A stretch of DNA of 64,000 nucleotides from Penicillus capitatus (Eukaryota > Plantae > Chlorophyta): NCBI GenBank assembly GCA_965649825.1, contig OZ287706.1, positions 806,001 to 870,000 of the forward strand, read 5' to 3'. This document shows, in pieces, positions 2,915-41,099 of the stretch. Position 1 is the first letter of the stretch, and every line of letters begins with the position of its first letter. Position numbers and translations under genes: made by a program. A model generated the notes under the pieces. It did not search any database and was not told the DNA's origin. It saw nothing but the letters and a program-made list of their open reading frames with translations.

Positions 2915-4149
2915 GAGCCGAGAAGCAAACGCGACAGCACCTCAATTGCTTAAGCATCATCAAGGCAGAGCATTTAAAAGACATACAGTCTTCCTTGCCG
3001 CGATCGGTGCTTTCTGCATGATCCTGTCGCCGTTTCTGTTTTTGGCTTCCGGTAAGGTCTTGACCAGGTATGTCTCTGAGTTGCAAGCACTGATCGATGT
3101 CTTATGCGAGTCGTGGGCGTGAGACACGCGGAAAGTCACTTGCAGTACTGTCATCTGTCCACGGGTCTCTCCATGTACTTCAACGTCGATGGCTGAGTCG
3201 ACGCCTTGTTTGTGGCAGCGTATCTACTGGACGTTCCACGCCACACGCGACGGCAGATCGCGTAGGACCATCAAAGAATACGGTACGACAGAATGATTTC
3301 TGTCGCCTCTCCCCTTCCAAACTTCGTCATCAAACACGGGACTCGCAGACGAATCCGAGTCTCTCGCACATCGAAGAACGAAAGGCTATCCAGTCTTCGC
3401 ATATATAACGAAGGGTTTCACGGGACAAGCTGATCGTGGAAACGCGGAACAGATCGGACCCACAAACTGCTACCGCCAACAGTCGTGTTCCTAGCAAACA
3501 CATATCAAGATAAAGGCGTGTATGGAGGAAGCGTCGCCAAATTGACAACTTGTCCCCAGGCGGATCATCACGTCACGAGGAAGTCGTAAGCGATCTGCGT
3601 GATCTACGTTCTGAACGATTCCCGCGGAAGACGTGGACAGCAACTGGCGAACGCTGTCGGTCAGCAAGCGCACTTCTCTGATCCTCTTATCCCGAAGTGA
3701 CTGCCGTTGCGTCTCGCATGGCCCGACGTTGTACTCGTGACGCATCTTTTATGAGTAACCGTTGTGATGTGACAATTAGCTCTGCGCCGTACCTCTCGCA
3801 GATTCCCGTCGGTTGGTTTTCTTCCTTCTGTGATCGCCGAGGTTGATCCATGTCTGCTTCAACCGTCGTTAAGAGGCACGATGAACCGCTGATCCTTGTG
3901 CTTAGTGCATTCACTGTTTGTCGATTTATTTGTTTTGACGCTGCACGTTTTGTGTGTCTCTGTCAATTGTCCTCGCTTCTGTCACTGTCTCCATTGTGCT
4001 AAATCCCAAACAGCTGCACATCAGTTCCGTTCGGGTGAGTGATTCCTTATGTCAGAGAAGGCCTACAGACGCTCTTCCATTGTCTCCATTGTTACAGAGG
4101 CTATTGAAATCACACCTGTCACTTATTGCGCGTGTCTAGTTTAGGTACG

Positions 4150-7100
4150 ATGATGACACGCGTGTTTCTTTGCGCGTGTGTTCTGTTTCTGCTCCAAGCA
4201 CTGAAGCCGTCTTTCTGCAGTCAAGGTACGTACGTACTGTCCCGTCTCGTCGACGAAGATGAATCCATTGTCCTCGCAGAGCATGGATTGCAAAGCCCAC
4301 CTTCCATCCCTCTCTTTCAGCAAAGCATGGTATGCTTCGATTTGCTCTTCGCTCAGTAAACGTCGTTGCACTCTTCCGATAGAGAAGTGCAGAATCCATA
4401 TCAGGCAAGTGCTCAGTCAGTATCACAATCAATGCATCATCCCTTTGTGCATTCAGGTACCGTCGAGAGCTTCGTTTTAGACAACAGAGCCGAAGCAAGA
4501 ATCGCCGTACGGCCAGGAAAGTATCTACACAGTGTATTAGGTGTCTTTGCGCAGGGTGGAAGTCCGGCACCGAGAGAGCGATTCCCATATATGTGTAGTC
4601 TGCGGCGGCGTGGCAGCGAAACGCATGCTTGCGGCGGCGTCCTTATCGATGAGCAGTGGATCCTTACGGCGGCGCATTGCCTGTGGAATAATGAGCAGAC
4701 TGGACTCGGACATTACGCTCTTGTTCGATGCGGCATCCACGAAATCGACACAAACAATCCGGAAACCGTAAGCGCCGACGCACCAGTCCGCAACCCGATG
4801 CACGATCGCGGGTTTTCGCGTCTTAGCTCTACCAGTCCAAAAAAGCATACTGGCCCACTGAATGGACGGGACACTTCAAGAAAGGGTCCGATATCGGACT
4901 CGTGCGTTTGGAGAGGAAAGCGCCTCTCGAGCGTCCTCTCATCGACAAAGCTCGCGATCGTTTACAGTTTGGGGATCTCATGGCGGCGATGGGTTGGGGC
5001 CTTACTGATAAAACGCGAGCAGCGAAGACGTTGCAGCTAGCCGCGAAGCTGCCGATCCTCGGCGCAGAGACCTGCGAGATCGTACTCGAAGAAGAACTCG
5101 ACGAGCACATGATCTGTGCCGGAGGAATCGGCATGGACACCTGTCGAGGTAAACAGGATAGATATCTCTCCCGATGACCGTGTCTACAAAGCGCCGCGCA
5201 TTTGTTTGTGCTTTAGGAGATTCGGGAGGTCCGTTGATTATTCCGCACCGACCGGAAAACGGTCTTTCGCAAGGAAGCCCTCAGCACGATATCCTGGTGG
5301 GCATTACCTCCTTCGGATCCCCTGAATGCGATGGAGAACTGCCTGCGGTGTACACACGTGTGGCCGATTACTGGAAATGGATCGAGGAAACGATAAAGAG
5401 CGAATCTGAGGTAAATACACTTGCCAATGGCAATCGCCTGGCAGCTCAGCGTGAGACGGCGATACGCACTTTTTCTCATCCTTTCCATCTCAGCCAGCGT
5501 CAAAACTCGATCGCGGTGTACTGTCGTGTAGATGCTTCAGTCTCTAGAACAGGAGAGTCGACAGGAACTTGCAGCCTCTCTCAGAACCCAGAAGGTGTCT
5601 GCACGACAGGAACAGTGTCATGTCGGATGATGCATTAACCGTTCCGCAGCCTCACTGTTAATCGTGTTTGCAGAAGATGCTGATGGAATTTGAAAACGAT
5701 CAAAACTGGAGCGTTATCGCTCTGCTCAATTCGAATATCTCCTCCAATACCATCTGCTATGATGAAAGCTTCAAGCATACGCCTTTGGTCAAGGGCTCGA
5801 CATTGCTTCACTGGGCGGCAGCGTTCGATGCGATAGACAGTGCCAAGGTGATGCTGTCACCAGATTTGTGTGTCTGTTTGCGCGACATCCTATTGGTTCG
5901 CAGATTCTCGTCGAGAACGGTGCAGAGATCAGCCGACAGAACAGAGACCTTCTGACTCCTCTGCACGTCGCTGCGGCGTACGGATCCCAATCAGCAACAA
6001 AGGCGAGTCGTGTGACACTCCATCGTTTCTCGCGAGAGAAGAATGCCATCGAAACGTGCGTCGATGACAGAAGAAGCGAATCTTTCGTCGACAATGCGCA
6101 AATGGCTTACCGACCAAACGCCTCAGCCGAATCACTTTCGCTAATCCTCTTCGACATGCTAAATCGATACTTCTGTGCACTCTGCAGTTTCTTCTGAATT
6201 CGAAAGCCGAGGTGAATGTCGTCGATATCGATGGACAGACGCCTTTGAGCTTAGCGTCGAAGAACGGCCATCGAAAGATTGTCGAGGTGAGCTTCCAGAT
6301 CGATTCGTCGTTTGGTATCGAGGCAACGATAGATACTCGTGGAACGAGGAGCAAATGTCAATACAACCGATCGGATTCGAGAAACTCCGTTACACAAAGC
6401 AGCGCGAACGGAACAGTCAGACGTCGCCAAGGCGAGCATTCGAGTTTCCAGTTCTCTTTTTGTCGATGACTGTCCAGTAAGTAGGTGCTGATCGAGGCCG
6501 GTGCTGATGTGAACGCAAGGGATCGCAGCGAGTGGACTGCTTTGCACATTGCAGCCGAGAGTGGACAAATGCAGATCGCGGAAGTACCTCCTCCGTTCCA
6601 TCGTTTTCACCCTTCCCATCACTTGGCCATTAGCTTCTTGCCGAGAACGGAGCCGATTTGGATGCGCGCGACGATGAGGGACAGACGCCTCTTCTGATCG
6701 CAGCGAAGACTGGACAACTGAGAATTGCGAAGGCACGTGCACTGAGCGGCGATCTTAATCCCGAAGGTGTCTGTTCAGGTGCTGATCGAAAAGGGAGCGA
6801 ATGTGGAAGGTGTGGATAATACGGGATGGACGCCGCTGTTAATGGCAACGAACAGTGGTCGCTTTGAGATCACAAAGGTGAACATCGATCGGCGAAGCGT
6901 CTGTTCCCGTCCACTGCATGTTCGATGTAGCTCCTCGTCGAAGAGAACGCGAACAAGGAACGATCGGATAGCATCGATGGCTGGACGGCATTGTCGGTGG
7001 CGGCGCGAAACGGAGATCTAAAAACCGTTAAGGTTTGGCCGATCGATCACCTGCGATGATTGTCATGGACATTATGACAGTGGCTGTTGGATCGTGATGC

Positions 7101-10100
7101 AAACGCGAGCGCAACAGACAAACACGGGGAAACACCATTGCACAAAGCGGCCAAAAGAGGAGAGACTACAGTCGTGACGGTATGTCTTGCACCTTTCGAT
7201 CGAGATCGATACAAGGAATGAGATTCCGGACAGGCACTGATCGAAAACGGGGCAGGTGTCTCTGTCGCTAATTTTCAAGGGAAAACGGCGTTGCATCTCG
7301 CCTCTTTCAAAGGAAAGAGTGCGACAGTTAAGGTGCGAGCTTGTCATGTCTCTTCCTTTCGGCGTCTTTGTCAGCGTCGTTGTCAAGGTTCTTCTGGATT
7401 GCGGCGTCGATGTCAATGCCGTCGATAACTATGGAAACGTGCCTTTGCACGATGCGGCATGGCAAGGTCATCTGCACGTCGTCGAGGTATGTCCTGTCCT
7501 GTCCTGTCCGATCTCTTTCCTAACGATCAAACGGGTAGATCCTTCTTTCTCAAGGAGCATCCGTCGATGCCAATGCGATCGATGGCGAGACGCCACTTCA
7601 AAGGGCGGCTTATGGCCGGTACATCAATATCTTGCAGGTAAACGACAGGTCGTCCTCGTTCATGAAAGCAGCCTTCAAAGCTGCTTAGACTCTCTTGGCG
7701 CATGGAGCAGATGTCAATCATGTCAAACAGAATGGATGGACAGTGCTTCATCATGCAGCACGGTACGGCTACACAGAGATCGCTACGGTGAGCTGCCTCT
7801 CACGTTTCTCTGTTATCCTTCTGCCGTATCATTTTTTAGCTTCTCATGGAACACGGAGCAGATCTAGACATTCGCTTGAGCGATGGATCAACTCCGCTTT
7901 ACCTGGCAACTTTCTTTAATTTCACAGAGATTGCTATGGTGAACCAACCATCTCATATCTATTCTTCGATAAGATGTATGGCATCATTTCACAGAGACTC
8001 ATCGATCTCGGGGCAAACGTCAATGTTGCGTCGAATACAGGACGGACATCACTGTTGGTGGCTACTTATGCCGGACATGTAGAACTCGCCAAGGTCGATT
8101 GTACATTGAGTTTGAGACCGCCCTGGAATTCGTGCTGTTTCAGGCGCTGATGGATCACGGAGCAAATGTTAACCATGTCGACAACGACGGATGGGCTCCT
8201 CTTCTTTCTGCCGCGCGCTATGGCCGAACAGAAATCGCCATGGCGAATTCTTCATCTATTCCGAGTTTCTGTCTGACATCGTATCGTTGCCTAGGCTCTC
8301 ATCGACCACAACGCAGATGTCGACGCTGTTCATAAGGAAGGATGGACGTCACTCTTGGCAGCATCCCGTTATAACCACACGGAGATCGCTATGGCAAGCT
8401 CCATATCAGTCCTGACTTATCCGATCCGTTTATATTATCATCTCAGGCTTTGCTCAATCATGGAGCGTTTGTCGATGCGATTGACAAAGAAGGATTCACT
8501 CCGCTTCATCAAGTCGCGAAACTCGGCCACCCAGAGATGGCTACGGTGAACTCCGATCCTCGGCAACAGTCCATTAATTCGTACTGTTCCATAGGCTCTC
8601 ATCGATCGTGGTGCAGATGTCAATGCCGCCAACAAGAATGGAAGCACTCCGCTTCTTCTAGCCGTGGGACTCGGTGACGCGCAGACCGTTATGGTATATT
8701 TCAGATATGCTCCACTGTTAACAAGCTCTGTAACTCCACAGGTTCTCATGAATCATGGGGCAAATGTGGATGCTGTTGACAACGATGGGTACACCCCACT
8801 TCTTCTAGCAGCTCGCTACAATAATACAAACATTGCAGTGGTAAGTCTACACAAGGTCTGAGTGTTTAAAATGCCAATATCCTTCTTTAGATTCTCATCG
8901 ACCATGATGCAGATGTCGACGCTGTTCATAAGGAAGGATGGACGGCACTTTTGGCGGCATCCAACCTGAACAACACAAAGATGGCAATCGTGGGCTCCAT
9001 ATCCGTTCTTGCTTCTCTGACGGCTGCTTGCAGGCTCTCATGAATCATGGGGCAAATGTGGATGCTGTTGACGACAATGGGTACACTCCACTTCTTTTGG
9101 CAGTGGGAAGAAGTCACACAGCAATTGCTCTGGTCCCGTTAAAATGCCTCGTACACATCCTATAATTTATCTCTTCCATAGGCACTGATCGGTCACGGAG
9201 CGAATGTCAATGTTGCTGATAAGAATGGAAGCACTCCACTTCTCCTAGCGACGGGACTCGGTTATACGCAGATCTCTACGGTATATCGCAGATTCGCTCC
9301 ACTGTTCACAAGCTCTGTACCTCCACAGGCTCTCATCGACAATGGGGCGAATGTAAATGTCGTCGACAACAATGGATACACTCCACTTCTTTTAGCAGTG
9401 GGACTGAATCACATACCAATCGCTATGGTGAATGACAGACACAGCTTCTGCACATGTACGTGGTTATCGATACCGCTTGCTCCCTTAGGCTCTCATGGAT
9501 CACGGAGCGAATGTCAATGACGTCGATAGAGATGGATTGGCATTGCTCCTTTTGGCGGTGGGAAGGAGTCACACAGCAATCGCACTGGTCCGTTTGCATG
9601 CTCCCGTACACGCACGTCCTATTGTTTATCTGTTCTATAGGCACTGATCGATCACGAGGCAAATGTTAATGTTGTTGACAACAATGGGTACACTCCACTT
9701 CTTTTGGCAGTGGGAAGCAGTCAGACAGCAATTGCTCTGGTCCCGTTTAAATGCCTCGTACAGATCCTATAATTTATCTTTTCCGTAGGCACTGATCGGT
9801 CACGGGGCGAACGTCAATGTTGCTGATAAGAATGGGTACACTCCACTTCTTTTGGCAGTGGGAAGCAGTCAGGCAGCAATCGCACTGGTCCGTCTGAACG
9901 ATTCATACACATTCTGTTGTTCACTCATTCCACAGGCTCTCATCGATCATGGGGCAACTGTCAATGACGTCGATAGAGATGGATACACTCCGCTCCTTCT
10001 GGCAGTAGAATTTGGCCTCACGACAGTCGCTGCAGTAGACACCGATTCTCCACATTTTTTCTATCATTCTCGGTGTTCGTAGGCTCTGATCGATCATGGA

Positions 10101-10514
10101 GCGTATGTTGAGGTTGTTGACAACTACGGATACACACCCCTCTTTCTAGCAACACACCTCGGACATATAAAGATTGCGCGAGTAGACCCCATTTTTGATC
10201 CGCGCTGCCTTGATTTCACATGGCTATTCAGGCACTCATTCACCATGGAGCAGACGTCAACCGCGCCGGCAATGATGGATGGACTCCGCTTCACGTTGCA
10301 TCGTACAACGGCCGTCTAATCATTGCAAAGGTAAGTGAGTTGTCTCCTGTGCGTGAAAAGTTACTCTTTGTCTCAGGATCTAATTGCTGCGGGTGCGGCG
10401 ATCGCACGCCGGACGGTGTATGGACAAATCCCTCGAGATTTTGTTTGCGCTGCACCTGATCGTGATTGCTCAGATGACACTCGAACATCTCTCATCCAGT
10501 TATTGACTCCATGA
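4150..10514 (+). CDS. Signal peptide + trypsin-like (S1) serine protease, probably fused to a long ankyrin-repeat array
   Basis: Hydrophobic leader; RIA|GG activation site; TAAHC, GSDIGLVRL and GDSGGP triad motifs; WGL and CAG motifs; then about 29 ankyrin exons ending ..SLIQLLTP* at 10514. The in-frame link at 5410-5680 needs short introns and is inferred. Confidence 0.75.
5903..10330 (+). repeat. Array of about 29 ankyrin-repeat exons, each 99 nt (one is 102 nt), phase 0, separated mostly by about 50-nt introns
   Basis: Each exon reads xLxxxGAxVNxxDxxGxTPLxxAxxxGxxxIAx between an AG and a GT/GC; period about 150 nt (e.g. exons at 6485, 6633, 6779, 7081, 7234 ... 10084, 10232). Confidence 0.9.
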
Positions 10515-11337
10515 ACACCTTCTGTGCTGTTCCAGGACGAAGTGTCACTTCGTGCTGTACCTGTTCGAAAGATCTTGCTGATTAACGCTCGGTGGCCGTT
10601 GGTGGCCGTTGGTGTCCGTATTCAAGACATCATTTCCTCGGACGAATAGGAACACGGTTTCATCGATCTGACAATGGCTCGGTTATCTGGGTCTTATTCG
10701 CACGCTCTAATCGTCGCGATGCATAATCTCTGTCTCATCAGGGACTTGCTTATCTGGATATTGTCTGAGCGTCTCGAAGATCGCATGACGATTTCATTTG
10801 TCTCCGACTTGGACACGAAAGGTGAGTATAAACGTCTGCTTATCTCCGATCATCGTCCTGACGCGTGTGGAATGAAATTTGTGACCGGTAAGCTTTCTCC
10901 CCATCATCGTTTTGTTAAAACAGCTGGAATACCCTAGCGAACATCGTTCAATACGTAAAGGAGCGTTCTAGATCGTAGCGATCGGGGAATCCATCAGATC
11001 CAATCATGCGATCGACATAACAAGTTCCAAGTAAGATCACCGACAGTTGATGATAAGGCAATGGCTTCTTCTTCTGGGATTTGCGTCGACGATTTCGTGT
11101 ATTTATCAAAAGCGTTACTTCTAATCGAATGATCTCTACTGAACTGCCATGGTTCAAAGCTCCGGTCGTTCTTCGCGATCCTTTATCTAAAAAGATGCGG
11201 CAATCGGAAGATCGAATCATTGTTCGATTGCGCGAAAACCGCATCTGTGACGAAAGATATCGATCGTCGATCATGATAATCGCACAGCCGCTTCGCTAAG
11301 AGAATGTTATCTTTTCATTGCATAACCTGTTCGTTTA

Positions 11338-14304
11338 TCACATAAAGACATCTAGATCTAATTCGTAGTTAAACTTCTGACGGATGTCGTCTTGAATCGA
11401 TCGGACAAACTCTCGACAGCAGGTACCAAAGGAAACAGGATATCGATCGCCGACTCTGCGAATCGCTTTCAGCGTTAAGCTCGCGATTCCCATCTGCATC
11501 TCATCAACGCCGTCAATCCATTCCTTCACTCGACAGAGCATGTCCGACGCAGAATCTGTCTTCCCTTTTACGCGTTCAGGCGGCCATTTCAGAACTTCGT
11601 CCCTTTCTTTGAGCCATGCGACCAGCTTGGCGGCGACGAAAGATGGAATTCGCGATTCACACCCGCGGCAGATTAGTTCTTCGATCGATGCGACATCTAC
11701 AAGCGCTCGGACTCACGGAGATCGGCATCCCTCAGGTGACGCGACTTGAAATGACAGGATGCTTCTTGCTCTCCGCCGCCTCCGTCACCGTCTTCTGTCT
11801 CTTCGTGTCCCGCGTGTCGTTACCCGCCACAAAGAGATTGTTACGTTCCAGTGGGATCGTCTCAATGATCTCCCGTCTCAACTCGACCGGCAAAGCTTCC
11901 AGCACACTCTCATCCACCTACTCAAATCACGCACGATAAGAACGACGTCGGGACAAGACGTCAGACATCGGCCAGGACAAGACCATCTGGTTGAACGACT
12001 CTGACGGAGCGCAGAACGATCGGAGCATGCGATCTGCTGCCCTTCGACTTTGCTTTCCGTTTCTTTCCACGATCGATCGGAACGGCGGATTGAGGTCGGA
12101 GATCCGACTTCGTGCCCTGGTCGACGGGCTTGAGCTCAGGCAACAATCTCTGCGATGCATCTCTTTCGCTGTCGAGTTTCGAAATCTGACAACGGCACAG
12201 AAAATCGAGTCCATCGTTGCCCCCTGTGAACACAGCTCACCCCAATGCCGAGACCTCGAATGTCAGCGACAGGAATCTCCATGCGCAGAAACAGTTGCCA
12301 GACATGCTGCAACAGAATCTCTGGACGGTCTGTGTACTGATCCAAGGTGTGACTGCGACTGTAGTGGTCACACGCTCCGCATCCCAGAAACTTTCGCGGA
12401 CACACTGGCGCGTCTTCCTGTCGTACTCGCACCTGTCACATCGCGATACATCCACAACGTTCGGTGTTTTGTCACGCACCTTCAGCGAGACGCATCGTCC
12501 TTTGAGACGCAGAAAAGACATTCGGTGCAGCACTTCGGCCAGAATCTCCTGTAGATAGCTCCGCACATCTTCGACCCTGTGGATTCGGATACCCCAGTTG
12601 CATTCGGCGCAAACGGACTTACGCGTCTGCCAGGAACCCCACGTCGCGTGAGCCGATCCTGCCGCCACGACTTCACACCTTCGGCAGTTGGACGGCCGCT
12701 GCGTCAATCCCATGTGATGCTCTCCACATCATCCTTCCTGTCTTTTCGCCGAACGCATCGATCAGCCACTTCTCGGATCTCTCCATCACCTGCGCCGTCG
12801 TTTCGATTCCTTCTGCTCGGAGCTTCTCTGTCAGCGACCATCCGATGCCTAGGTGCTCGATCATCGACAGGCGAATCACGCGATGTGACAGCAATGCCTG
12901 GAATGTCGTGAAGGGGGACTTCGCAGAGGAAGGCCGAAATCTCGGCGCTCAGAACGCGATACTGCCCGTCGGGTTTGGCCTTGGACGTCGCCATCTTGGC
13001 CAGGAGCTTGTTCGGTCCAATTCCGGCACTGGCTGGGCACCGCGTCGTGTCGTAGATCTCGCATCGGATGCGCCGTGCCAACTCTTCAGGGTCTCCCAGT
13101 CCCGTCACATCAAGGTACGCTTCGTCACACGATACTGGCTCGACACGCGCACTGTAACTCGACAGAATTCCGTACACCTAACAGACGTCCGTTCGGTCGC
13201 ACTGTCGAACGGAACGCGCTCTGAGTGCCTGTTCTGAAATTTCGTGATACTGCTGGAACTGATAGGGGACGACTTTCAGTGCCGGGCACTTCTCCAGGGC
13301 AGACGAGATGAAGGATCCAGCACGAATTCCGAATCGACGAGCCGGGTAGTTTGCACACGAGATCTCTGCTGTGCCGTTCCTGTTGCTGGAATGGCACACC
13401 ACGAAAGGAACGTCTCTCAGTTCCGGCCGCGTCAGCAAAGCCACGGACGCGAAGAAACAGTCCATGTCGATGTGCACGATCTGTCTGTCTCCTGTCAATA
13501 AGGCCGTGCAGCATTTGGTCGGGGTTTCCGAGAGGCACCTGTTTTGGCGGGTTTGGGCCCCCGGTTCCTCTGCTGTTGCAGGAAGCCTTCGATGCGCAGC
13601 TTCCAGGTGCCGATGAAATGAAGCCTCGAATGTTCAAAGTAGCTACGGATGAAAGCGCTCGGCGTCAGATCAGCATTCTTAAAATAGGCTGTCTCTTTTT
13701 CGGCATCTCCCTCCGGAGGCATGTCCACTGTCATCTCTGCTTCCTCTTGCGGATCGTCATGGCTCATTAGAAACGCATCGAGGCGTCGATCCCGGGGATC
13801 CTGGATCTGCTCGAGGGCAAAGTCCTCCACGGGCAGCACCTCTCCTGCATCGATCGACGCAGTGATCCACTCCGGCCGCACGACCGGAACCGGATTCCTG
13901 CAGCGATGCGATCCCCCCAGTCAGACAGCGTTTACGATAGAGCACGGGCACTTTTCTTTTCGGAGCTGGCGGATCTTAGCGAGTGGCAATTGACTGCAGA
14001 TGAGGTGTGTGACAGGAGGACGGTTGTCGTAGATCTCGAATCCTCCTCCATGTAAGGCCATCAGATGTCTGAGCTCCTGTTGCGATGGCACGGTGTGTCC
14101 ATTGACGAAGATCGTGATGCCGGTGAACAGCGATGTCTTTTCCTGTCCTCCTTCGAGATGGAACCGTTCCAGTTCTTCATTCCGAAACTGCCTTCGGAAC
14201 TTGGCGTTTTTGTTGTCGAAGTAGCGGGACCAACTGCCACCGTGGCCCGCAGATGGCTCGGCTTCGCGCTTGCGCGAGGGCTTTCGTACGGTATTTGCAT
14301 CCAT
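11338..14304 (-). CDS. REV1: DNA repair protein REV1 (Y-family polymerase)
   Basis: N-terminal BRCT (FTGITIFVNGHT..HLIC), IVHIDMDCFFASV, SCDEAYLDVT, ASAGIGPNKLLAKMAT, UBM-like VLEALPVELRREI and a C-terminal REV1 domain; multi-exon. Confidence 0.95.
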
Positions 14305-14629
14305 CGACAGCCAGAAGACGAAATGCTGCGACGTCGCGGAGGACAGGCCTCGGCCCGAAGGTCAATGCAGTTGATTTCGTTGAGGTTTGTCTCAAAAACC
14401 TGTTGCATGTACCGATCCTGTCTCGTCTTTTGGATCTAACGGATCATCTGACTGCCATTTCCTAAACGTCGCCTCTCTGGGTATTTCTCCATCGGCCAAT
14501 CCATCAAACGTATACAATCAATCATGAATACGTGGCCCTTGTGAAGGGACCCTTCGTTCCGATACGCCATTGGCAGTCCACAAACGCCGTTGCTTGACGC
14601 GATTGATCCCAAAGAGGCAAGGAGCCGCC

Positions 14630-14637
14630 TATATATA
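14630..14637 (+). promoter_or_regulatory. Candidate TATA box upstream of lectin gene 1
   Basis: TATATATA about 45-50 nt upstream of the ATG at 14682. Confidence 0.35.
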
Positions 14638-14681
14638 CGTCGTTCGTTAACTGCTCTTCTGAGGACCTGTGGTTTCTAGCC

Positions 14682-15947
14682 ATGCGTACCAACCTCATTT
14701 GCAGCCCGTGTCTGGCGTGTGTCTGCGCCGTTCTGTTCTTTGCAGTTGTATCGTTCGGTTACACGGAACATGAGGCAGTCACACGGAACGACCTCCTCCT
14801 CGCCAAGGCTTTGAAAAACGGAGAATTCTGCTGTCCTTGCGTTTTGGAGAAAGCCGAGGTGGATCGTCGAACCACTCGCGAAAACTGCTGCCCCTGCGCT
14901 CTTGAACAACGTCTGAAGAAGATTCCGCTCGCACCTCTTCATCGTGCCCGTGCCGTGTACAGCAACGAGGCGAAAGACCCGGCAGTGAAGTCCTGCGAAC
15001 TCATCACCGGCGATCTTCTCTCGTCTCTGCCGAACTGCGTTTCTTTCAAAAGAGGACAAGTGGACTGCTTCTACGTCAACTATGAAACGCAGACGGTCAT
15101 CCACAAGACGATAAAGGACGGTACACCGCAGGAATCAGTCGATAATCAAGCAAAAGTACGCGATGAAGTGATTCCTGTGGCCAAGTCTAGCAACAAATTC
15201 ACCCTCATGACCTTGAACCAGTCGAACCATTTGATGACCAGAATGATCAGAGGCGGTGAATGGACGGAATGGGAGACGATCGAGAATGCCATGGCACTGG
15301 AAGTGCCGTCTGTCTTTATGCGTGGCAGCGGAGGTGTTACCTGCTTCTACCGATCAGTAGACAATTCGCTTTGGTATGTGGACCGTTCGCGCTATGGCAA
15401 ATGGGAACCACCAAAGAAGCTCCAGCTGGAGGGTTTGGTATCACCTCCGACATGCACCGAACGCGGGGATGGCGATGCCGAAGACTGTTTCGCCTTGGCA
15501 TCCGACAACTCTGTGTCGCATGAGATGTGGGTTTTCGGGGGAGAATGGAAAGTACAGCCGGGAGCGGGTGGAATGGGAAAACAGCGCATCTCTGTGACAA
15601 GCTGGGACTACGATCGTGCCGACATCTTCGTCCTTGGCGTCGGCAATCAGCTCATGCACCGAGCCTTTGTGGAAGAGGAGTGGGAGGAATGGGAGGATCT
15701 CGGCGGCAGCTTCGTGTCTGCTCCGGAATGCATTGCAATCGAAGACGAGGCGATACACTGTTTTCTGATCGGTGTCGATCGTACTCTCATGCGCAAGTCG
15801 TTCGTCGACAATTCTTGGTCGGACTGGTTCTCCTCTTCCTATGCCATGATCGAAAAGCCATCATGCGTGGTGACAGGAGGAACGACAATTGCGTGTTACT
15901 CACGCGGATACACCGGACACATGGTCGAGATCGTTTACGAACTCTAA
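14682..15947 (+). CDS. Secreted PLL/DUF346-like beta-propeller (lectin-like) protein, copy 1, intronless
   Basis: 421-aa ORF with signal peptide, two CCPC motifs and blade repeats such as ISVTSWDYDRADIFVLGVGNQLMHR..WEEWEDLGGSFVSAP. Confidence 0.75.
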   Translation: MRTNLICSPCLACVCAVLFFAVVSFGYTEHEAVTRNDLLLAKALKNGEFCCPCVLEKAEVDRRTTRENCCPCALEQRLKKIPLAPLHRARAVYSNEAKDPAVKSCELITGDLLSSLPNCVSFKRGQVDCFYVNYETQTVIHKTIKDGTPQESVDNQAKVRDEVIPVAKSSNKFTLMTLNQSNHLMTRMIRGGEWTEWETIENAMALEVPSVFMRGSGGVTCFYRSVDNSLWYVDRSRYGKWEPPKKLQLEGLVSPPTCTERGDGDAEDCFALASDNSVSHEMWVFGGEWKVQPGAGGMGKQRISVTSWDYDRADIFVLGVGNQLMHRAFVEEEWEEWEDLGGSFVSAPECIAIEDEAIHCFLIGVDRTLMRKSFVDNSWSDWFSSSYAMIEKPSCVVTGGTTIACYSRGYTGHMVEIVYEL

Positions 15948-16076
15948 GTTTTCGATCCATTACGTGCGCGTTTTGTTTTTTTGATTAAGAGATGGGTTTA
16001 TAAGCACTTTGCTGTGCGGGTGTTTGCGGGTGATGTTGTTTGAACAGACGCAAGTCTTTCAAATCGATTCAAGTGT

Positions 16077-17358
16077 TTACAGACGTTCTATCCAGTCCCA
16101 GATCTCTTCGGCCAGTCGCTGTAGATCGCGCGATCGCATGATCTCTGGGAGGATGTCTTGACGGAGAAAAGAGACGGGCTCCCCTCCCAGCATCTCTCCG
16201 TTTCGTCCCTGCAGTAGATCCATGCAGATCTTTCGGAGCTTCGTCTCCTCGTCCTTGGTGACGGAATGGCATCGTGTGGCACGAGAGGTCAGGAAACGGA
16301 CGTAAGCCAACGTCCACTTGCGATAGTCTGTTGGGAACTTCAGCTCGATCGCGTTCATGATTCCCTGTTCCAGATGATGCTTCACATCTGCCTGACTGGC
16401 ATGCAAGGATAATGCATCGAGTTCAATATCGCTCGTCTCATCTAGTCGACAAACAAATCGTTCGCTGTCTTTGAGAATGATCACTGTGATGGCTTACCTG
16501 TATCCATCTGCGCTGCTTGATGACCGGTCTGTCTCTGTGATGGATCTGAAATGAGGGTCCATGCTTCGAGGGAAGTATTGTAGAGATAAGCATGCCCGTC
16601 CGAAAGCATGGCAATTGGCAAGGAGTTGGAGCTGAAGTGGATGGTTGACACTGCACACACAACCACCTTCATTCGGTGAAGGATGATGCTAAGAAAAGAC
16701 CGCACGTTGGGCTTCCTTGCAGAGCGAGCAGACAGAGGCGCGATAGATCGACGGCCTCTTTGAACGGCTCCGAGATCTGTTGGATGCACATCCAGTCCGA
16801 GGTCCGCCAAATGAAGACTCGTTTGGCATCGGCCTGACTCGCGAGGAACTGACCGAGTGGATCCCATGCCACGCCCTTGACCATATTCTTGTGGCCGGTA
16901 ATGATGTGACAGGTCTCTCCCCCTTCGACATCCCAGATGATGATCGCCCCGTCCAGACTGCAACTGGCGAGCATATGTCGACGTGTGGTGGTGCCCCATG
17001 CGACTTCCGAGACGTCGAGCTTCTGCTGATGCCACTTGCGAAATGGGCGCCACGAAGGTTCGTTGAAAGGCACCCATGCGGCAACACTGACAACGCCGTC
17101 CGACCCTCCCGAGGCCAAGAGACGGCCAGTGTGATTGAATCGAACGGAGTTCACAGGCTTCTCGTGAACTTTGATCTCGGCGAGCAGCGAAGTGTCGTTG
17201 GAAGAGGAGAGCGCTTTGGCGAAGCTCCAGACGTTAACGACGCCATCGTCACCGCCGGTCGCAAATGCATTTCCGCGGGGCGAGATATCGATAGAGAAGA
17301 TCGGAACGACGTTTTCCTTCTCCAAGTGCACCGCCCATGTCAACGGCTTAGTAATCAT
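16077..17358 (-). CDS. HIRA: HIRA-like histone chaperone, internally shortened
   Basis: N-terminus PIFSIDISPRGNAFATGGDD, HEKPVNSVRF, VKGVAWDPLGQFLASQADAK; C-terminal Hira-domain motifs LSDGHAYLYN..W, HLEQ..A..LKFPTDYRKWTLAYVRFL, LRKICMDLL. Total span is only about 1.3 kb. Confidence 0.8.
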
Positions 17359-18553
17359 TCTTGTAGCAGATTGACGTAACGCGCACGACAACCAGGAGAG
17401 AATGGAAACGCCGACGAACGCAGACTACTACACGAACTGGGAAGGCAAAGGTGAAGAGCTGCTAGCTGTCTCGCTGAGGTGAGAAGGCGTCGTGCAGGAT
17501 TGGTGAAGCCGGCGCCGCCTCCGGAAGTGCGAGACTGGCCGCAACCCGTCGGACTGACACCGCACGAAGAATACATGATTCATCCTTCGGTCAACAAAGT
17601 CTCCCTGGGGCTCGGCTGGGACGAGTGAGCGCGTGTGATGCCGAATGTTCGAGAGGGATACCGGGTTTCGCTGTAGAGGAGTGGATGTGGATGCCTCTGC
17701 AGCCCTCATTGGTTCCCAGCACGACGTGGTGGACCTCGTCTGGTGGCACAATCTCAAGAGCACATGCAAAAGTGTCAAGCATTCGGGCGATGACACGACA
17801 GGCGAAGGGGGTGGCGATGATGAGATCATCACAGTCGACATAACAGACATTCCGTTGAGGGTGCACCACATCCTCTTCGCCGTCTGCATCTACAGTGACG
17901 GATTCTCCTTCGATCAAGTCCGTCTGCAGCGTCCTATGTGTCCTCTGCACGTCCTTTTCTCTGTGTAGCTGCGCAGAGCGTATGTGAGAATGATGCACGG
18001 GAAGCCAAAGTACAAGGGACACATCATGTGCCAGTTTGAGCTGAACCAGCTGGTCGGTCGAGCGATGTTGATGGGAGTGATGACGAGGAAAGGTGCTTAC
18101 TGGAGCTTCAAGGCACTCGGTATTCCTGCTACGGGCCAGACCATCCAGGACGTCGTACAGGTAAGTGTCTCATTCCTTGTACCTACACGACGGCACCGCC
18201 ATATGTGTTTTTCAGAATCCTGCAAACTTGGAGTTCCTGCAGTCGAGCATCTCCTTTCCGCCACTGCTAAGGAACGTGAGTGTCCGTGTGACGCAGGGGG
18301 CAGAGTTGGCTGCAAAGGATGCCGCCAGATTCGGAAGAGAGGCATCATCTGACCCTTACTTCACTCTGAAGTTTAAGAAGAGTGTTGGTTTTCTGCAGTG
18401 CTATTCGACGATGGGGCAGATTTGGCGCTGAAAAACAGGCCAAAATCGTCAGCGCAGCAGCGGGGTTACGCTATTAGTTGTTAGCAACGCAAAGCGACTT
18501 GATCGACACTGTGAAGAACTCCCTCTAGTTACACCACCCTCCACGTCTCTTTC

Positions 18554-18622
18554 GCCTCGTGGTGTAGCGGTTGGCACACTTGGGGATTTCCCAAGAGGCG
18601 TGGGTTCGAATCCCATCGAGGT
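18554..18622 (+). other. tRNA-like head of the SINE (not a functional tRNA)
   Basis: Cloverleaf folds: GCCTCG/CGAGGT acceptor, GTG/CAC D stem, CTTGG/CCAAG anticodon stem, GTGGG-TTCGAAT-CCCAT T arm. The anticodon loop GGATTTC lacks U33 and purine 37. Confidence 0.75.
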
Positions 18623-18925
18623 CCCGTGCGTCACTCGGGTGATAGTGACAGGTCGGAGGGTTAATCGGCATCTCGCCGCGACGTAATTGGACAAATGCTC
18701 GGAGATTGAAATCTAGACCCCTAGCCGCGGGTTGGAGGGTCACGTCTGGGGAGGTCGACGACGCAAGACTGTCGAGAACGAGACGCCGGAAGACGAGCGA
18801 TTTAATGAACGATGGATGGGTGATAGATGAAAATCGATGAACACTTGAACGGTTAACTAGCGGTGAATGTCGGGTTGTAAAATGCCTCTTGCGAATGCGA
18901 CTGTAAACAAACCACGATTGACACA
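18555..18925 (+). mobile_element. tRNA-derived SINE nested in the solo LTR
   Basis: 13-bp TSD CACGTCTCTTTCG (18542-18554 and 18926-18938); tRNA-like head with A box TGGTGTAGCGGTTGG and B box GGTTCGAATCC; short CA tail; empty site in the related LTR near 52.0 kb. Confidence 0.85.
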
Positions 18926-20385
18926 CACGTCTCTTTCGACCTCTTCGGCATGGACGACCCGTATCTCTCTTTCGCCGCCTTAGTCGGGGAGTGGAAGACT
19001 AAAGTCGCCGGAGTCTTGGCCGGGAGATGGAGGGGCGTCGTGGCTAGATTCATCTTCGTGTTGGCTCATCTCACCAAGCGCAGCGGAAGTCTTGAAGTCA
19101 GATAATGATGGGAAAGAGCTTGGAGGCCGCACCGACAATTTTGCAGAAAGGAGACGACTTGTTACAATCGATGATAGATAGCAAATGTTTGTAAGACAGA
19201 AACGGGGTTTATGCGATGTCCAAAAGATAACAGAAACTCAGGTGTCAAACGAGAGATGATTTATGTGTCCAGACCCTTGCTTAAATACCCAGTCCCTGAA
19301 GTGACGATAGGAAAAACAGATGAACTTCAAGAGTGAGTTCACAATGAGATTCACAATCAGACTAGGAAGTTCAGCATGAAATTCTAGAAGCTTCCCAAGA
19401 ACTTCGCAGGAACTCGCTCCTAGTCAGCATGACTTGTCCGCGACTCAGCGGCGACGGCTCCGTTGCGCAGCCAAGAACGCGAAAAGGCATAAACGACAGA
19501 AGATGCAATCCATTATGTTGTCGTCTCATCACGTTCCCTCAGAATTGCGCCCTTTCTTCACAGACACAATTGGCCCGTAACACCGGAAACTTTAAACCCA
19601 AACTTGCTCCCAAAGTTTTTACTTTGTATGCCTATGTACTATGTTCTTCTTGCGTTTTTTCTTAGTTACGCACACAAGATTCATGTTTTCTGTCGCTTCT
19701 TGGCGACATCTTGATTTCATGCCGTCGCCTTATTGCGCCGCCACATCTTTAGGCTTCTACCACACGCTGCGTCTTCTTCTCAGCGCGTTGACTGTCATTT
19801 CATCACGTCAACTGACTGCCACGGGTTTCTCGTTATTAATGTAATCCAGACTGATCATTCAGGGTTACAGCACTCCTCGTCGCCTCAGACTTCTGGCTCA
19901 AAACTCGACGTCGCCTGCACCTCGCAGGTCATTTGCTGCTCCAAACTCGATGTCGCCGCGAACTTAGCAGCTATCGAATTCCGCCAGCTTCTGAGATTTC
20001 TGGCCAGCGGCTAAGTACCCGCAGATGATAGTGACGTTTTTCCTAGCATTCTGACAATGCACGTCATCCAGACTCGAACCCTGGATATCTGCTCGATCAC
20101 GAGTTCCGCGTCCTACTGCAGACCCGTCTCTCACCCTGCTTTGGTCACTTCGTGACCCTCTCCAGCGCTCTCTTAACCGTCGCTGAATACTTTTTCGTCC
20201 TTTAAGCAATCGGTCTTGACGGCCTTCGAACCGTCGCCAAAAACTTCTTCGCCTGATTACTTAGCGCACCAACAAAGAGAACATTCAAATCAAACTTCGT
20301 CAAGAGGTCGCTGAATCCGACGTGGAATGAAACTGCTTTTAATTTGGGACGCATAAGCGAATCGGAACCGAAGGCTTTGAAGATT

Positions 20386-22061: not shown

Positions 22062-22405
22062 AAGGCTTTGAAGATTGAAGTGTACGATCGCGATCCTATC
22101 TCGAGGGACGATTTCATGGGAGCCGTTCGGATTCCTGCAAGTGCCCTGTGCAACACCGGCCCAGGAACACACTATTTTTGGTTTGATTTGGGTCCTGGAA
22201 AGAAAGAAGATCGACAGACCACCGTCTCGGGGAGGATTCTGGTGTCCGTGACGGCAGAGGATTCATGAATTCTGTCGTGCGACACCACATTCGTCCGTCG
22301 ACTCCCCACGCAAACGACACTCATTAAAGTCTTTTATTTTCTGCTTTTACGGGCGATCGACGTCTGTGCTCATGGTCATTGTCGTAACGAATAGATATTT
22401 TGTGA

Positions 22406-24672
<2,267 letters not shown>

Positions 24673-25009
24673 TAGGGGCGATTCCTGGGGAACCAAATCC
24701 CATCGACCACGATGGCATTGCCCAAGGGATACCATGGCATCTGTCCGATAATTCAAGAGGGACGTTAGCAAAACAATACCGGGATGTCTGCAAACACGCG
24801 AGAGGTGTCTGTCTCCTGTCCTTGCTCGCCCTTTGCGAAGTTCTGGAGCTGCGGACCTTATTCATGAAAAGTTCCTCGAGATCCTGGCACAGAACATTCT
24901 CGATAACGGATAGCGACGGTTGGGCACGCGCCGTCAGCATAAAAGGCGGCGGCACATGCAATGCGCAGCCTTTTTGTTTTCTTGCACGCGTTTTGTCGCC
25001 AGCGCAAAA

Positions 25010-40804: not shown

Positions 40805-41099
40805 CTTTGCTTTGTGTATAAGTCGAGAGGTGTATGGTTCGTGAATTGAATCTTGACCGAACGCGAAAACGAATTGAGATTGAAACGCTACGACCGGTCC
40901 GTCTTCTGATTGGTTATTAAGGGATCCATCTAGACACGGCACGTATTGTTCCGTCTGCGTCCGGCCCCGGAAAAAGTACTCCCGAAACCGTTTTAGGAGG
41001 TCGCGGGGGTTTACGTAGCTACGGCGTCATGATTTCTTCGCAATGGAAGGCTTCGGAAAACGGCGTCGAAAGGAAAGTAGCAGTTTCAAGGCAGTTGCA

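What the first reader, a model, noticed from the sequence alone, without database searches (positions are those of the whole stretch)
4150..10514. Trypsin-like protease + about 29 ankyrin repeats, each on its own 99-nt phase-0 exon
Seen: strict one-repeat-per-exon architecture, so any exon can be skipped, duplicated or swapped without a frameshift, downstream of a protease with a complete catalytic triad and a signal peptide. Established: the same logic (one repeat per symmetric exon) was proposed to diversify candidate immune receptors (LRR-ROCO, NB-ARC-TPR) in Ectocarpus. Ankyrin repeats are usually cytosolic, so a secretory protease-ANK fusion would be unusual. Inference: a modular, re-targetable protease whose binding surface varies by exon shuffling or alternative splicing.
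Basis: partly seen in the sequence, partly recalled or inferred. Interest (0 to 1): 0.8.

Follow-up and report, generated by a model that had tools for sequence, protein, structure and literature searches.

The report
Secreted trypsin-like protease with 30-ankyrin tail
An uncultured marine eukaryote carries a gene for a probably secreted trypsin-like protease joined to about 30 ankyrin repeats, each on its own 99-base exon; the gene family is real but undescribed, and here its repeat array has grown, and still changes, one exon-plus-intron unit at a time.

Summary
On the + strand, 4150-10514 fits a 37-exon gene: a signal-like N-terminus, an S1A trypsin domain (His/Asp/Ser triad, Asp189), an N-cap ankyrin exon, 29 one-repeat exons (28 of 99 nt, one of 102 nt), and a last exon with a Cys-containing tail. 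From the junction on, all boundaries are phase 0. Introns are mostly 43-68 nt, and five use GC donors.

The protease-ANK fusion cannot be shown directly because there is no RNA. It is well supported by relatives. Signal peptide + trypsin + ANK + the same tail recurs in Bryopsis, Ostreobium and Caulerpa proteins and in spliced transcript contigs. A paralog on another contig of the same metagenome has the same junction intron.

Those relatives have 4-8 repeats and the paralog has 6 repeat exons, so this array is an expansion. It grew by duplication of 148-nt exon+intron units. An inverted 96-98% copy on the same contig differs by exactly one such unit (an R25/R26 hybrid). A syntenic related genome lacks the gene altogether.

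I found no sign of positive selection (dN/dS 0.12-0.64). Alternative splicing could not be tested. Verdict: a new variant of mosaic serine proteases, of moderate interest.

The parts
4150..4225 (+). Exon 1: start codon and signal-peptide-like N-terminus (MMTRVFLCACVLFLLQALKPSFCSQ)
   Evidence: The best 12-aa Kyte-Doolittle mean is 2.71, similar to the N-termini of relatives. The donor is AAG|GTACGT.
4280..4329 (+). Exon 2 (pro-region; low-confidence model)
   Evidence: The flanking introns are 54 and 53 nt, and the phases are consistent.
4383..4456 (+). Exon 3 (pro-region; low-confidence model)
   Evidence: An alternative acceptor for the next exon at 4533 is also in frame.
4500..4767 (+). Exon 4: start of the S1A protease domain. 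Holds the motif ERFPYMCSLRRRG and catalytic His57 (codon 4675-4677)
4836..5148 (+). Exon 5: catalytic Asp102 (4890-4892) and specificity-pocket Asp189 (5136-5138)
   Evidence: tblastn is 100% over 4836-5150.
5217..5410 (+). Exon 6: GDSGGP with catalytic Ser195 (5222-5224), a family-specific loop, and the end of the protease domain (WKWIEETIKSESE)
   Evidence: The donor is GAG|GTAAAT, phase 0.
5411..5673 (+). Protease-ANK junction intron (263 nt, phase 0 to phase 0). A weaker in-phase alternative donor lies at 5597
   Evidence: Without splicing, the frame stops at 5636-5638, only 38 nt before the first ATG of the ANK frame (5677). The paralog L005 has a 191-nt intron at the same position.
5674..5847 (+). 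First ANK exon (174 nt): N-terminal cap plus half a repeat. Carries the family motif LLHWAAAFDAIDSAK
   Evidence: It is homologous to P0001 residues ~340-400 and to L005 11225-11401.
5904..6002 (+). Repeat exon R1 (99 nt, GC donor)
6188..6286 (+). Repeat exon R2 (99 nt), preceded by a 185-nt intron
6333..6431 (+). Repeat exon R3 (99 nt, GC donor)
6485..6583 (+). Repeat exon R4 (99 nt)
6634..6732 (+). Repeat exon R5 (99 nt, GC donor)
6779..6877 (+). Repeat exon R6 (99 nt)
6931..7032 (+). Repeat exon R7 (102 nt, the only one that is not 99 nt)
7081..7179 (+). Repeat exon R8 (99 nt)
7234..7332 (+). Repeat exon R9 (99 nt)
7388..7486 (+). Repeat exon R10 (99 nt)
7539..7637 (+). Repeat exon R11 (99 nt). 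Last of the old, divergent block R1-R11
   Evidence: R1-R11 share about 40-55% nt identity with the other repeats; R7, scored ungapped, gives 23-43%.
7689..7787 (+). Repeat exon R12 (99 nt). Start of the more homogeneous block R12-R28
7840..7938 (+). Repeat exon R13 (99 nt)
7995..8093 (+). Repeat exon R14 (99 nt)
8144..8242 (+). Repeat exon R15 (99 nt, GC donor)
8295..8393 (+). Repeat exon R16 (99 nt, GC donor). 79% identical to R20
8447..8545 (+). Repeat exon R17 (99 nt)
8595..8693 (+). Repeat exon R18 (99 nt). Its flanking introns are about 87% identical to those of R22
8742..8840 (+). Repeat exon R19 (99 nt)
8891..8989 (+). Repeat exon R20 (99 nt)
9034..9132 (+). Repeat exon R21 (99 nt). 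87% identical to R25; the downstream introns are 91% identical
9182..9280 (+). Repeat exon R22 (99 nt)
9329..9427 (+). Repeat exon R23 (99 nt)
9489..9587 (+). Repeat exon R24 (99 nt). First unit that is also present in the second, inverted copy on the same contig
   Evidence: 93/99 identical to L087 4967-5065.
9641..9739 (+). Repeat exon R25 (99 nt). Donates the 5' 34 nt and the upstream intron of the hybrid unit in the second copy
9789..9887 (+). Repeat exon R26 (99 nt, 88% identical to R25). Donates the 3' 65 nt and the downstream intron of the hybrid unit
9936..10034 (+). Repeat exon R27 (99 nt)
   Evidence: 99/99 in L087.
10083..10181 (+). Repeat exon R28 (99 nt)
   Evidence: 99/99 in L087.
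10232..10330 (+). Repeat exon R29 (99 nt)
   Evidence: It is 99/99 in L087, but there its acceptor AG has become AA.
10377..10514 (+). Last exon: half repeat (C-cap), the conserved tail IPRDFVCAAPDRDCSDDTRTSLIQLLTP, and the TGA stop
   Evidence: The tail motif [TS]PxDxxC...C......LL is shared with Bryopsis, Ostreobium, L005 and transcript contigs.
3655..11298 (.). Interval holding the whole gene. It has no counterpart at the syntenic site of a related genome (L088)
   Evidence: The flanks align at 75-84%. The L088 interval is 3.35 kb of integrase-like debris, with 0 tblastn hits to the protein.
9470..27658 (.). Copy A of a 96-98% identical inverted segmental duplication. Its left edge lies in the intron before R24
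   Evidence: Copy B is L087, mostly beyond the window end; window 62328-64000 is its tip.

Best explanation
Window 4150-10514 is one gene. Its product enters the secretory pathway through an N-terminal signal peptide.

The protein has three parts:
- an S1A (chymotrypsin-fold) serine endopeptidase with a basic-residue (trypsin-type) pocket;
- a long ankyrin solenoid of about 31 repeats, joined directly to the protease;
- a short Cys-containing cap.

It belongs to an undescribed family (signal peptide - trypsin - linker - ANK - Cys tail). The named members of that family are all in siphonous green algae (Bryopsidales).

The most likely working principle is that of other mosaic serine proteases. 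The catalytic domain cuts after Arg or Lys. The non-catalytic module decides where or on what, by binding a partner, a substrate or a surface. The solenoid here would give a very long, multi-site binding or tethering surface.

The array reached about 30 repeats through repeated unequal homologous recombination between 148-nt units, each made of a 99-nt exon plus an intron of about 49 nt. Each unit is a multiple of 3 in coding length and is flanked by phase-0 introns, so every gain or loss keeps the reading frame and the 33-residue structural period. That process is still active.

Shown: the gene anatomy, the domain identities, the family, the duplication history, the one-unit difference between copies, and the presence/absence between related genomes.

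Inferred: splicing across the junction, secretion, activity, and the binding role of the solenoid.
For: Anatomy and domains.

One gene rather than two:
- The protease, the N-cap exon and the tail each match the same family. In that family all three lie in one open reading frame: P0001 is an uninterrupted ORF on a 1952-nt contig.
- L089 is an RNA-type contig that aligns to nine exon blocks of the Bryopsis gene with the introns removed.
- Annotated Ostreobium and Caulerpa proteins have the same layout.
- The paralog L005 has a strong donor right after the last protease codon and an acceptor before AAG ATG, at the same positions.
- Without splicing, only 38 nt separate the protease stop from the ANK ATG.

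Secretory route:
- Hydrophobic N-termini occur across the family.
- All three conserved S1A disulfide pairs are present. This is read from the protein sequence using the standard chymotrypsin Cys positions (my knowledge); one search shows the alignment of the domain to factor D.
- Two Cys are conserved in the tail.
- In Ostreobium, about 40% of an expanded S1 family is predicted to be secreted (preprint 10.1101/2020.07.21.211367).

Two modules: the AlphaFold model of P0001 gives a confident protease (about 80) and ANK+tail (over 90), a disordered linker and pTM 0.49.

Modularity: the same protease clade is fused to a PLL beta-propeller in P0008/P0009.

Expansion by unit duplication:
- TRF finds a 148-nt period.
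- Identity rises from 40-55% in R1-R11 to 55-88% in R12-R28.
- The introns were co-duplicated (91% and 87% identity).
- Breakpoints lie inside exons.
- The paralog has 6 repeat exons. Relatives have 4-8 repeats, in 1-3 exons.

Ongoing change: copy B carries an R25/R26 hybrid, which is exactly one unit fewer.

Functional constraint: there is no stop or frameshift in 37 exons, and dN/dS is 0.12-0.64.
Against: - There is no RNA from this organism, so the junction splice, the five GC donors and exons 2-4 are all predictions.
- The junction intron (263 nt) is five times the typical length.
- The first ANK exon begins K-M in both this gene and L005, so an internal start cannot be excluded.
- The usual activation N-terminus (Ile16-Val-Gly-Gly) reads Ala-Gln-Gly-Gly here and varies across the family. 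The protein may not be activated like classical trypsinogens, or may be weakly active.
- Ankyrin repeats are rarely extracellular. No signal-peptide predictor was available.
- No binding partner is known.
- The organism is unidentified.
- The second copy could be a fold-back assembly of two haplotypes rather than a true duplication. The one-unit difference would stand either way.
Confidence: 0.6

Rival explanations
1. Two adjacent genes. A secreted trypsin-like protease ends at the in-frame stop 5636-5638. A separate, cytosolic ankyrin-repeat protein starts at ATG 5677. The in-frame junction would be coincidental.
For: - The protease frame stays open past 5410 and reaches a stop.
- The first ANK exon starts K-M here and in L005.
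- Phase compatibility alone has a 1-in-3 chance.
- The junction intron is unusually long.
Against: - A 38-nt gap leaves no room for a 3' end plus a promoter.
- Strong donor and acceptor sites sit exactly at the ends of homology in both paralogs.
- The N-cap and the tail are those of a family that is always fused to this protease clade, including in spliced transcripts.
- No ANK-only member carrying this tail turned up, although that was not searched for specifically.
Confidence: 0.12
2. The array is a diversity generator: exon skipping, alternative splicing or somatic recombination yields many isoforms with different binding surfaces. [quoted passage not shown]
For: - All 29 repeat exons are symmetric phase 0-0, so any subset can be spliced in frame.
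- Unit number differs between two near-identical copies.
- The gene is present or absent between related genomes.
- The Ectocarpus precedent exists.
- The neighbourhood is rich in secreted lectin-like and trefoil proteins. A NACHT ORF lies near the paralog.
Against: - No transcript data exist.
- dN/dS is below 1 in all 13 young pairs.
- The entropy pattern is the generic ANK one.
- The N-terminal 11 repeats are old and individually distinct, which fits a fixed multi-site scaffold better.
- Symmetric exons are an automatic by-product of unit duplication and need not be selected for.
Confidence: 0.15
3. The solenoid is mainly mechanical: a rigid or elastic spacer or tether that holds the protease at a set distance from a wall or membrane anchor. 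The precedent is the 29-repeat ANK helix of TRP-N/NOMPC channels. It would not be a variable recognition surface.
For: - The array length is about one superhelical turn. 29 repeats is cited as the optimum for NOMPC in PMC5100051.
- The protease is joined directly to the N-cap with almost no linker in my model.
- A conserved Cys tail could serve as an anchoring point.
Against: - Relatives work with 4-8 repeats and long disordered linkers.
- The number of units is not conserved, even between the two copies.
- No anchor motif or transmembrane segment was seen.
Confidence: 0.1
4. A runaway, effectively neutral repeat expansion in a dispensable or decaying gene, with no specific function for the extra repeats.
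For: - The gene is absent at the syntenic site of a related genome.
- The second copy is a 5'-truncated fragment with a broken acceptor, next to a retroelement.
Against: - All 37 exons are intact over 4.2 kb of coding sequence.
- All splice sites are preserved.
- dN/dS is well below 1.
- The old repeats R1-R11 have been kept despite deep divergence.
Confidence: 0.05

Closest known systems
Uncharacterised 'Peptidase S1 domain-containing proteins' with C-terminal ankyrin repeats in Bryopsidales. Examples: Bryopsis sp. KO-2023 BSKO_04377; Ostreobium quekettii CAD7695175 and CAD7703444; Caulerpa lentillifera g5115.t1
   Same: - They have a signal-like N-terminus.
- The S1A clade is the same (GRFPYMxSLR motif, Asp189, an inserted loop after GDSGGPL; 32-46% identity against 28-34% to other trypsins).
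- The N-cap motif LLHWAA is shared.
- The C-terminal Cys tail is the same.
   Different: - They carry 4-8 repeats, encoded in one exon (Ostreobium) or three exons (Bryopsis) and separated from the protease by long disordered linkers.
- This gene has about 31 repeats, one per exon, with almost no linker and tiny introns.
- The source organism is not shown to be a green alga.
Animal mosaic S1A proteases: complement factor D, C1r/C1s, kallikreins, factor XI, CLIP-domain proteases
   Same: - The catalytic fold is the same, and these are the best solved-structure matches (factor D 1e-24).
- They are secreted.
- Non-catalytic modules set their specificity.
   Different: - Their modules (CUB, Sushi, apple, CLIP) are N-terminal. 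Here the module is C-terminal and made of ankyrin repeats.
- The canonical Ile16 activation N-terminus is not conserved here.
HtrA/DegP-type proteases (trypsin-fold protease with C-terminal PDZ domains)
   Same: The working logic is the same: a protease followed by a C-terminal protein-binding module that recruits or gates substrates (my knowledge, not tested).
   Different: They belong to a different subfamily (S1C) and use a different binding fold. They work as oligomeric cages. There is no repeat array.
[quoted passage not shown] 2012, PMC3341825)
   Same: Each repeat is encoded by its own exon, and the number and order of repeat exons is variable.
   Different: - Those are intracellular GTPase or NB-ARC signalling proteins with LRR or TPR repeats.
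- They show diversifying selection and exchange of exons between paralogs. Neither was found here.
Long ankyrin solenoids of animals: ankyrin-R/B/G (24 repeats) and TRP-N/NOMPC (29 repeats)
   Same: They are very long uninterrupted ANK arrays of about one superhelical turn (PMC5100051). From memory, many repeats in the human ANK1-3 genes lie on 99-bp exons; I did not check this here.
   Different: Those arrays are cytosolic, are attached to spectrin-binding or channel domains, and have a strongly conserved repeat number.

Membership tests
Peptidase family S1A (chymotrypsin/trypsin; Pfam PF00089) | Profile match above the curated threshold over the whole domain | tested here: met
   151.1 bits against a 20.6-bit cut-off; profile positions 2-220 of 220.
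Peptidase family S1A (chymotrypsin/trypsin; Pfam PF00089) | Catalytic triad His57/Asp102/Ser195 with the GDSGGP oxyanion-hole motif | tested here: met
   The motifs are TAAHC, DIGLV and GDSGGP, aligned residue for residue with complement factor D.
Peptidase family S1A (chymotrypsin/trypsin; Pfam PF00089) | Trypsin-type S1 pocket (Asp189, Gly216, small residue at 226) | tested here: met
   Asp189 aligns with Asp189 of factor D. S-F-G occupies 214-216. Position 226 is Ala rather than Gly (read from the sequence).
Peptidase family S1A (chymotrypsin/trypsin; Pfam PF00089) | Zymogen activation N-terminus Ile/Val16-x-Gly-Gly after a cleavage site | tested here: not met
   The sequence is ...GVFAQGG, so positions 16-17 are Ala-Gln. 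P0001 has R|ISGG, but other family members also deviate. This is a feature of the classical zymogens rather than of the fold.
Ankyrin repeat (Pfam clan Ank) | 33-residue period with the TPLH / GADVN signature, and profile matches | tested here: met
   (Ank_2 at 1.6e-204; 22 Ank stretches). One search gives the column profile: L2, A7, G16, T18, L20 and A23 are nearly invariant.
Signal peptide-trypsin-ANK-Cys-tail family (Bryopsidales type; unnamed) | Protease of the GRFPYMxSLR clade | tested here: met
   The top hits are all ANK-fused members, at 39-46% identity.
Signal peptide-trypsin-ANK-Cys-tail family (Bryopsidales type; unnamed) | N-cap motif (LLHWAA..D...SAK) and C-terminal tail ([TS]PxDxxC...C......LL) | tested here: met
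Signal peptide-trypsin-ANK-Cys-tail family (Bryopsidales type; unnamed) | All parts on a single mRNA | not testable with these tools
   No RNA exists for this organism. It is shown for relatives only.
Exon-shuffled repeat receptors (Ectocarpus ROCO / NB-ARC-TPR type) | One repeat per exon, with symmetric phases | tested here: met
   29 of 29 repeat exons are phase 0-0.
Exon-shuffled repeat receptors (Ectocarpus ROCO / NB-ARC-TPR type) | Turnover of repeat exons between copies or paralogs | tested here: met
   a one-unit difference with a hybrid exon; 6 against 29 repeat exons in the paralog. I saw only in-array duplication and deletion, not exchange between genes.
Exon-shuffled repeat receptors (Ectocarpus ROCO / NB-ARC-TPR type) | Diversifying selection on the repeat surface | tested here: not met
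   dN/dS is 0.12-0.64 in 13 pairs. Power is low (99-nt units, possible gene conversion).
Exon-shuffled repeat receptors (Ectocarpus ROCO / NB-ARC-TPR type) | Signalling domain (ROC-COR or NB-ARC) attached to the repeats | tested here: not met
   only the Trypsin and Ank families are found.

The most novel reading that the evidence does not exclude
The gene is part of a non-self recognition or surface-defence system of a marine protist or alga. A secreted protease would be aimed by a fast-changing ankyrin solenoid. New specificities would arise by recombination among, or selective splicing of, one-repeat exons. Sister proteases would be aimed by lectin-like beta-propellers. This would be an extracellular, protease-based counterpart of the exon-shuffled receptors proposed for brown algae.
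Probability: 0.15. Interest if true: 0.8.

Novelty: new variant of a known kind. Interest (0 to 1): 0.55.

Why it matters
- It documents a conserved but undescribed protein architecture: a secretory trypsin-like protease carrying ankyrin repeats. Ankyrin repeats are normally a cytosolic fold. I found no mention of the fusion in the papers I could search.
- It gives an unusually clean natural example of how a repeat protein grows. The unit of change is one exon plus one intron. An actual unequal-crossover product is preserved next to its parent, and a 6-repeat paralog and 4-8-repeat relatives serve as baselines.
- If the solenoid aims the protease, the family offers a simple system for asking how binding modules retarget a protease. 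It may also bear on wound or defence biology in giant-celled green algae and their relatives.

Tried and rejected
- **Organism identity.** A HIRA-like ORF gave only 36-39% hits, mostly unnamed, so this was uninformative. An exact ORF look-up showed that the window is ENA metagenome assembly ERZ25074695, contig ctg340479_41x_l. Genes there were called prokaryote-style, which is why the spliced protein is absent from the protein database.
- **Metagenome scans.** The window protein found nothing. The family alignment returned only generic, mostly bacterial-looking trypsins, because the scan patterns were universal S1 motifs. P0088 proved to be bacterial.
- **Other copies in the window.** There are none.
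- **Hidden exons.** I found no ANK-like frame in the 185-nt intron or the 263-nt junction intron.
- **Positive selection.** Nei-Gojobori estimates on the young pairs are all below 1. In R18/R22 the exon is less similar (74%) than its introns (87%). I attribute this to gene conversion of exons by other units rather than to selection; this is unproven.
- **Intron retention.** Three 48-nt introns (8694-8741, 9281-9328, 9888-9935) are in frame and free of stops. They are related copies, and the chance expectation per intron is about 0.46, so I do not read them as coding.
- **One-repeat-per-exon as an ancestral trait of the family.** Rejected for Bryopsis and Ostreobium.
- **Structure.** The model of P0001 gave no confident inter-domain geometry (pTM 0.49). 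I did not run fold searches.
- **Exact look-up of a GNAT ORF.** Nothing was on record.

Full report
**What is in the sequence**

The window is eukaryotic DNA with about 50% G+C. Three-frame translation of 4100-10600 shows a trypsin-like domain split by short introns. A long run of ankyrin repeats follows, changing frame every ~150 nt.

I searched for AG...GT/GC-bounded open segments and assembled them by hand. This gave a 37-exon model:
- six exons for a 325-aa N-terminal part (4150-4225, 4280-4329, 4383-4456, 4500-4767, 4836-5148, 5217-5410);
- a 174-nt exon (5674-5847);
- 29 exons that each hold one 33-residue ankyrin period, 28 of exactly 99 nt and one of 102 nt at 6931-7032;
- a 138-nt last exon (10377-10514) ending in TGA.

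From 5410 onward every boundary is phase 0. All 36 introns end in AG; 31 begin with GT and 5 with GC. The median intron length is 51.5 nt, and 34 of the 36 lie between 43 and 68 nt. The exceptions are the junction intron (263 nt) and the intron after R1 (185 nt).

**The domains**

The N-terminal part matches Pfam Trypsin at 5e-44 over the full profile. The C-terminal part matches the Ank families at up to 1e-204.

The best solved-structure relatives of the protease are complement factor D, chymotrypsin, kallikreins and factor XI, at E about 1e-24. That alignment places His57, Asp102, Ser195 and Asp189 correctly (codons). The three disulfide pairs typical of secreted S1A enzymes are present in the sequence. 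This reading uses the standard chymotrypsin Cys positions from my own knowledge.

The N-terminus is a short basic stretch followed by 14 hydrophobic residues. No signal-peptide predictor was available, so 'signal peptide' is a reading by eye.

One departure from the classical enzymes stands out. The activation N-terminus reads Ala-Gln-Gly-Gly instead of Ile-Val-Gly-Gly.

**Is it one gene?**

This is the weak point of the finding, and no RNA exists for this organism.

The protein database does not hold the spliced product. The window comes from an ENA metagenome assembly (ERZ25074695, contig ctg340479_41x_l, 954 kb), where genes were called as in bacteria.

The evidence is therefore comparative, and it is consistent.
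- The best database matches to the protease are themselves trypsin-ANK fusions.
- The named matches all come from siphonous green algae: Bryopsis sp. KO-2023, Ostreobium quekettii and Caulerpa lentillifera.
- These proteins share three things with the window gene: the protease clade; the motif of the first ANK exon (LLHWAA..D...SAK); and a C-terminal tail, [TS]PxDxxC...C......LL, after the last repeat.
- P0001, the closest at 46%, is an uninterrupted 578-codon ORF with both UTRs on a 1952-nt contig.
- L089 is an RNA-type contig that aligns to nine exon blocks of the intron-containing Bryopsis gene. So a single spliced mRNA spans signal peptide, protease, repeats and tail in a relative.
- A second contig of the same metagenome (L005) carries a paralog with a signal-like start, the protease, and a strong donor right after the last protease codon. 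A 191-nt intron and an acceptor before AAG ATG follow, the same arrangement as here.
- If the window held two genes, only 38 nt would separate the protease stop (5636-5638) from the first ATG of the ANK frame (5677).

I put the fusion at about 0.8. A weaker in-phase donor at 5597 would add a 62-residue linker without changing this conclusion.

**How the array arose**

Relatives have 4-8 repeats. In Ostreobium the whole ANK region is one 726-nt exon. In Bryopsis it is three exons. One repeat per exon is therefore not an old trait of the family.

The trait is shared with the L005 paralog. That gene has a 177-nt first exon, six repeat exons (99, 99, 90, 99, 99, 99 nt) and a 135-nt last exon, all phase 0. 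The window gene is thus an expansion from a short one-repeat-per-exon ancestor.

Within the array:
- R1-R11 are about as different from each other as unrelated ANK repeats (about 40-55% nt).
- R12-R28 are 55-88% alike.
- Some neighbours share their introns as well: R21/R25 are 87% identical in the exon and 91% in the downstream intron, and the introns flanking R18 and R22 are 87% identical.
- TRF reports a 148-nt period at 9549-9891.
- The identity breakpoints fall inside exons, as expected from unequal crossing-over between misaligned units rather than from any exon-specific mechanism.

**Direct evidence of ongoing change**

A search with the neighbouring beta-propeller ORF led to two syntenic loci.

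The first, L087, is an inverted copy, 96-98% identical, about 55 kb away on the same contig.
- Its left edge lies in the intron before R24, so it carries only the 3' end of the gene.
- It holds an R24-like exon (93/99), then a single hybrid unit, then R27, R28, R29 and the tail.
- The hybrid unit has the upstream intron and first 34 nt of R25, and the last 65 nt and downstream intron of R26.
- The two copies therefore differ by exactly one 148-nt unit, with the crossover visible.
- Copy B lacks everything upstream and sits next to reverse-transcriptase and integrase ORFs. The acceptor of its R29 has mutated from AG to AA. It is probably a dead fragment.

The second, L088, comes from another assembly (ERZ26696514) and is syntenic at 75-84% on both sides. 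Where the window has the 7.6-kb interval holding the gene, L088 has 3.35 kb of integrase-like debris and no trypsin or ANK coding potential.

The gene is therefore present in one genome and absent in a related one, and its repeat number is not fixed.

If the inverted copy turned out to be a fold-back join of two haplotypes, the unit difference would become an allelic polymorphism. The point would stand.

**What it probably does**

The triad, the oxyanion motif and the basic pocket are intact. Nothing interrupts 4.2 kb of coding sequence. Young repeat pairs show dN/dS of 0.12-0.64. The gene is therefore under constraint.

The AlphaFold model of P0001 gives two confident modules on a disordered linker, with no fixed orientation.

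The same protease clade also occurs with a different C-terminal module, a PLL-type beta-propeller (P0008/P0009). Three free-standing, signal-bearing propeller genes of that kind lie in this window.

My reading is a secreted Arg/Lys-specific endopeptidase whose C-terminal module decides where it acts. Here the ankyrin solenoid would serve as a very long binding or tethering surface. The binding role is inference from what ankyrin repeats do elsewhere.

Where the protein acts, whether at the wall, in a vacuole or in the medium, is unknown. So is the process it serves, whether wound response, defence or feeding. The Ostreobium genome paper notes an expanded S1 family, about 40% of it predicted to be secreted, and suggests feeding on organic matrix. 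It does not mention the ANK fusion.

**What is not supported**

Nothing here shows alternative splicing. Symmetric exons follow automatically from unit duplication.

The variable columns are the usual ANK ones. Mean entropy is 2.7 bits at the canonical binding positions against 1.6 elsewhere, but the outer helix positions are also high.

I saw no exchange of repeat exons between genes. The comparison with the Ectocarpus receptors therefore holds for gene architecture and unit turnover. It does not hold for diversifying selection or for domain content.

**Novelty**

The family exists in public protein sets only as 'Peptidase S1 domain-containing protein' or 'hypothetical protein'. My literature searches found no description of it.

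The 30-repeat, one-repeat-per-exon version, with a preserved crossover product, is a new variant of mosaic serine proteases and a good case study in repeat-protein evolution.

The organism remains unidentified. A HIRA-like marker gave no close named relative. The ~50-nt introns differ from the 85-1300-nt introns of the Bryopsis and Ostreobium homologs. I would not assume that the source is a green alga.

Noticed in passing
window 14682-15947 (+), 39548-40942 (-), 45493-46794 (-): Three intronless paralogs (about 60% identical) encode signal-bearing proteins with a PLL-type beta-propeller (PF26607). In transcript-like contigs P0008/P0009, the same propeller, including its C-terminal ...CYSR...EI.YE ending, is fused behind the same trypsin clade.
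   Followed up: partly
window ~9470-27658 versus L087 (same contig, inverted; window 62328-64000 is its tip): A large inverted segmental duplication at 96-98% identity covers the DNA-polymerase IMS, PLL, HIRA, C2 and trefoil genes. It could also be an assembly fold-back of two haplotypes.
   Followed up: partly
window 18383-22061: This 3.7-kb segment holds a 363-aa ORF (20753-21844, minus strand, no Pfam hit). It is missing from both the inverted copy (L087) and the related genome (L088), so it is an insertion private to this copy, possibly a mobile element.
   Followed up: no
window 25590-26731, 26761-26916 and 63800-64000: Trefoil (P-type) domain genes carry a 356-nt tandem repeat (3.2 copies, 100% identical) and 42-nt repeats that encode EKPEPSPYEKAKIE-like units. 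Trefoil domains are best known from animal mucosal proteins.
   Followed up: no
window 6003, 6432, 6733, 8243, 8394 (intron starts): Five of the gene's 36 introns (14%) use GC rather than GT donors. That is far above the roughly 1% usual in most eukaryotes (from memory). The paralog on L005 shows none among the nine donors I examined.
   Followed up: no
L005 1593-3062: A NACHT-domain ORF lies a few kb from the trypsin-ANK paralog on the second contig of the same metagenome.
   Followed up: no
L088 3101-6451: At the site where the window has the protease-ANK gene, the related genome has integrase-like ORF fragments (retroelement debris). Whether the gene was gained here or lost there is open.
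   Followed up: partly
window 49449-49979 (-), 51341-51817 (-), 56204-57133 (-): Two GNAT acetyltransferase paralogs and a phosphatidylserine-decarboxylase-like ORF, all apparently intronless, lie downstream.
   Followed up: no
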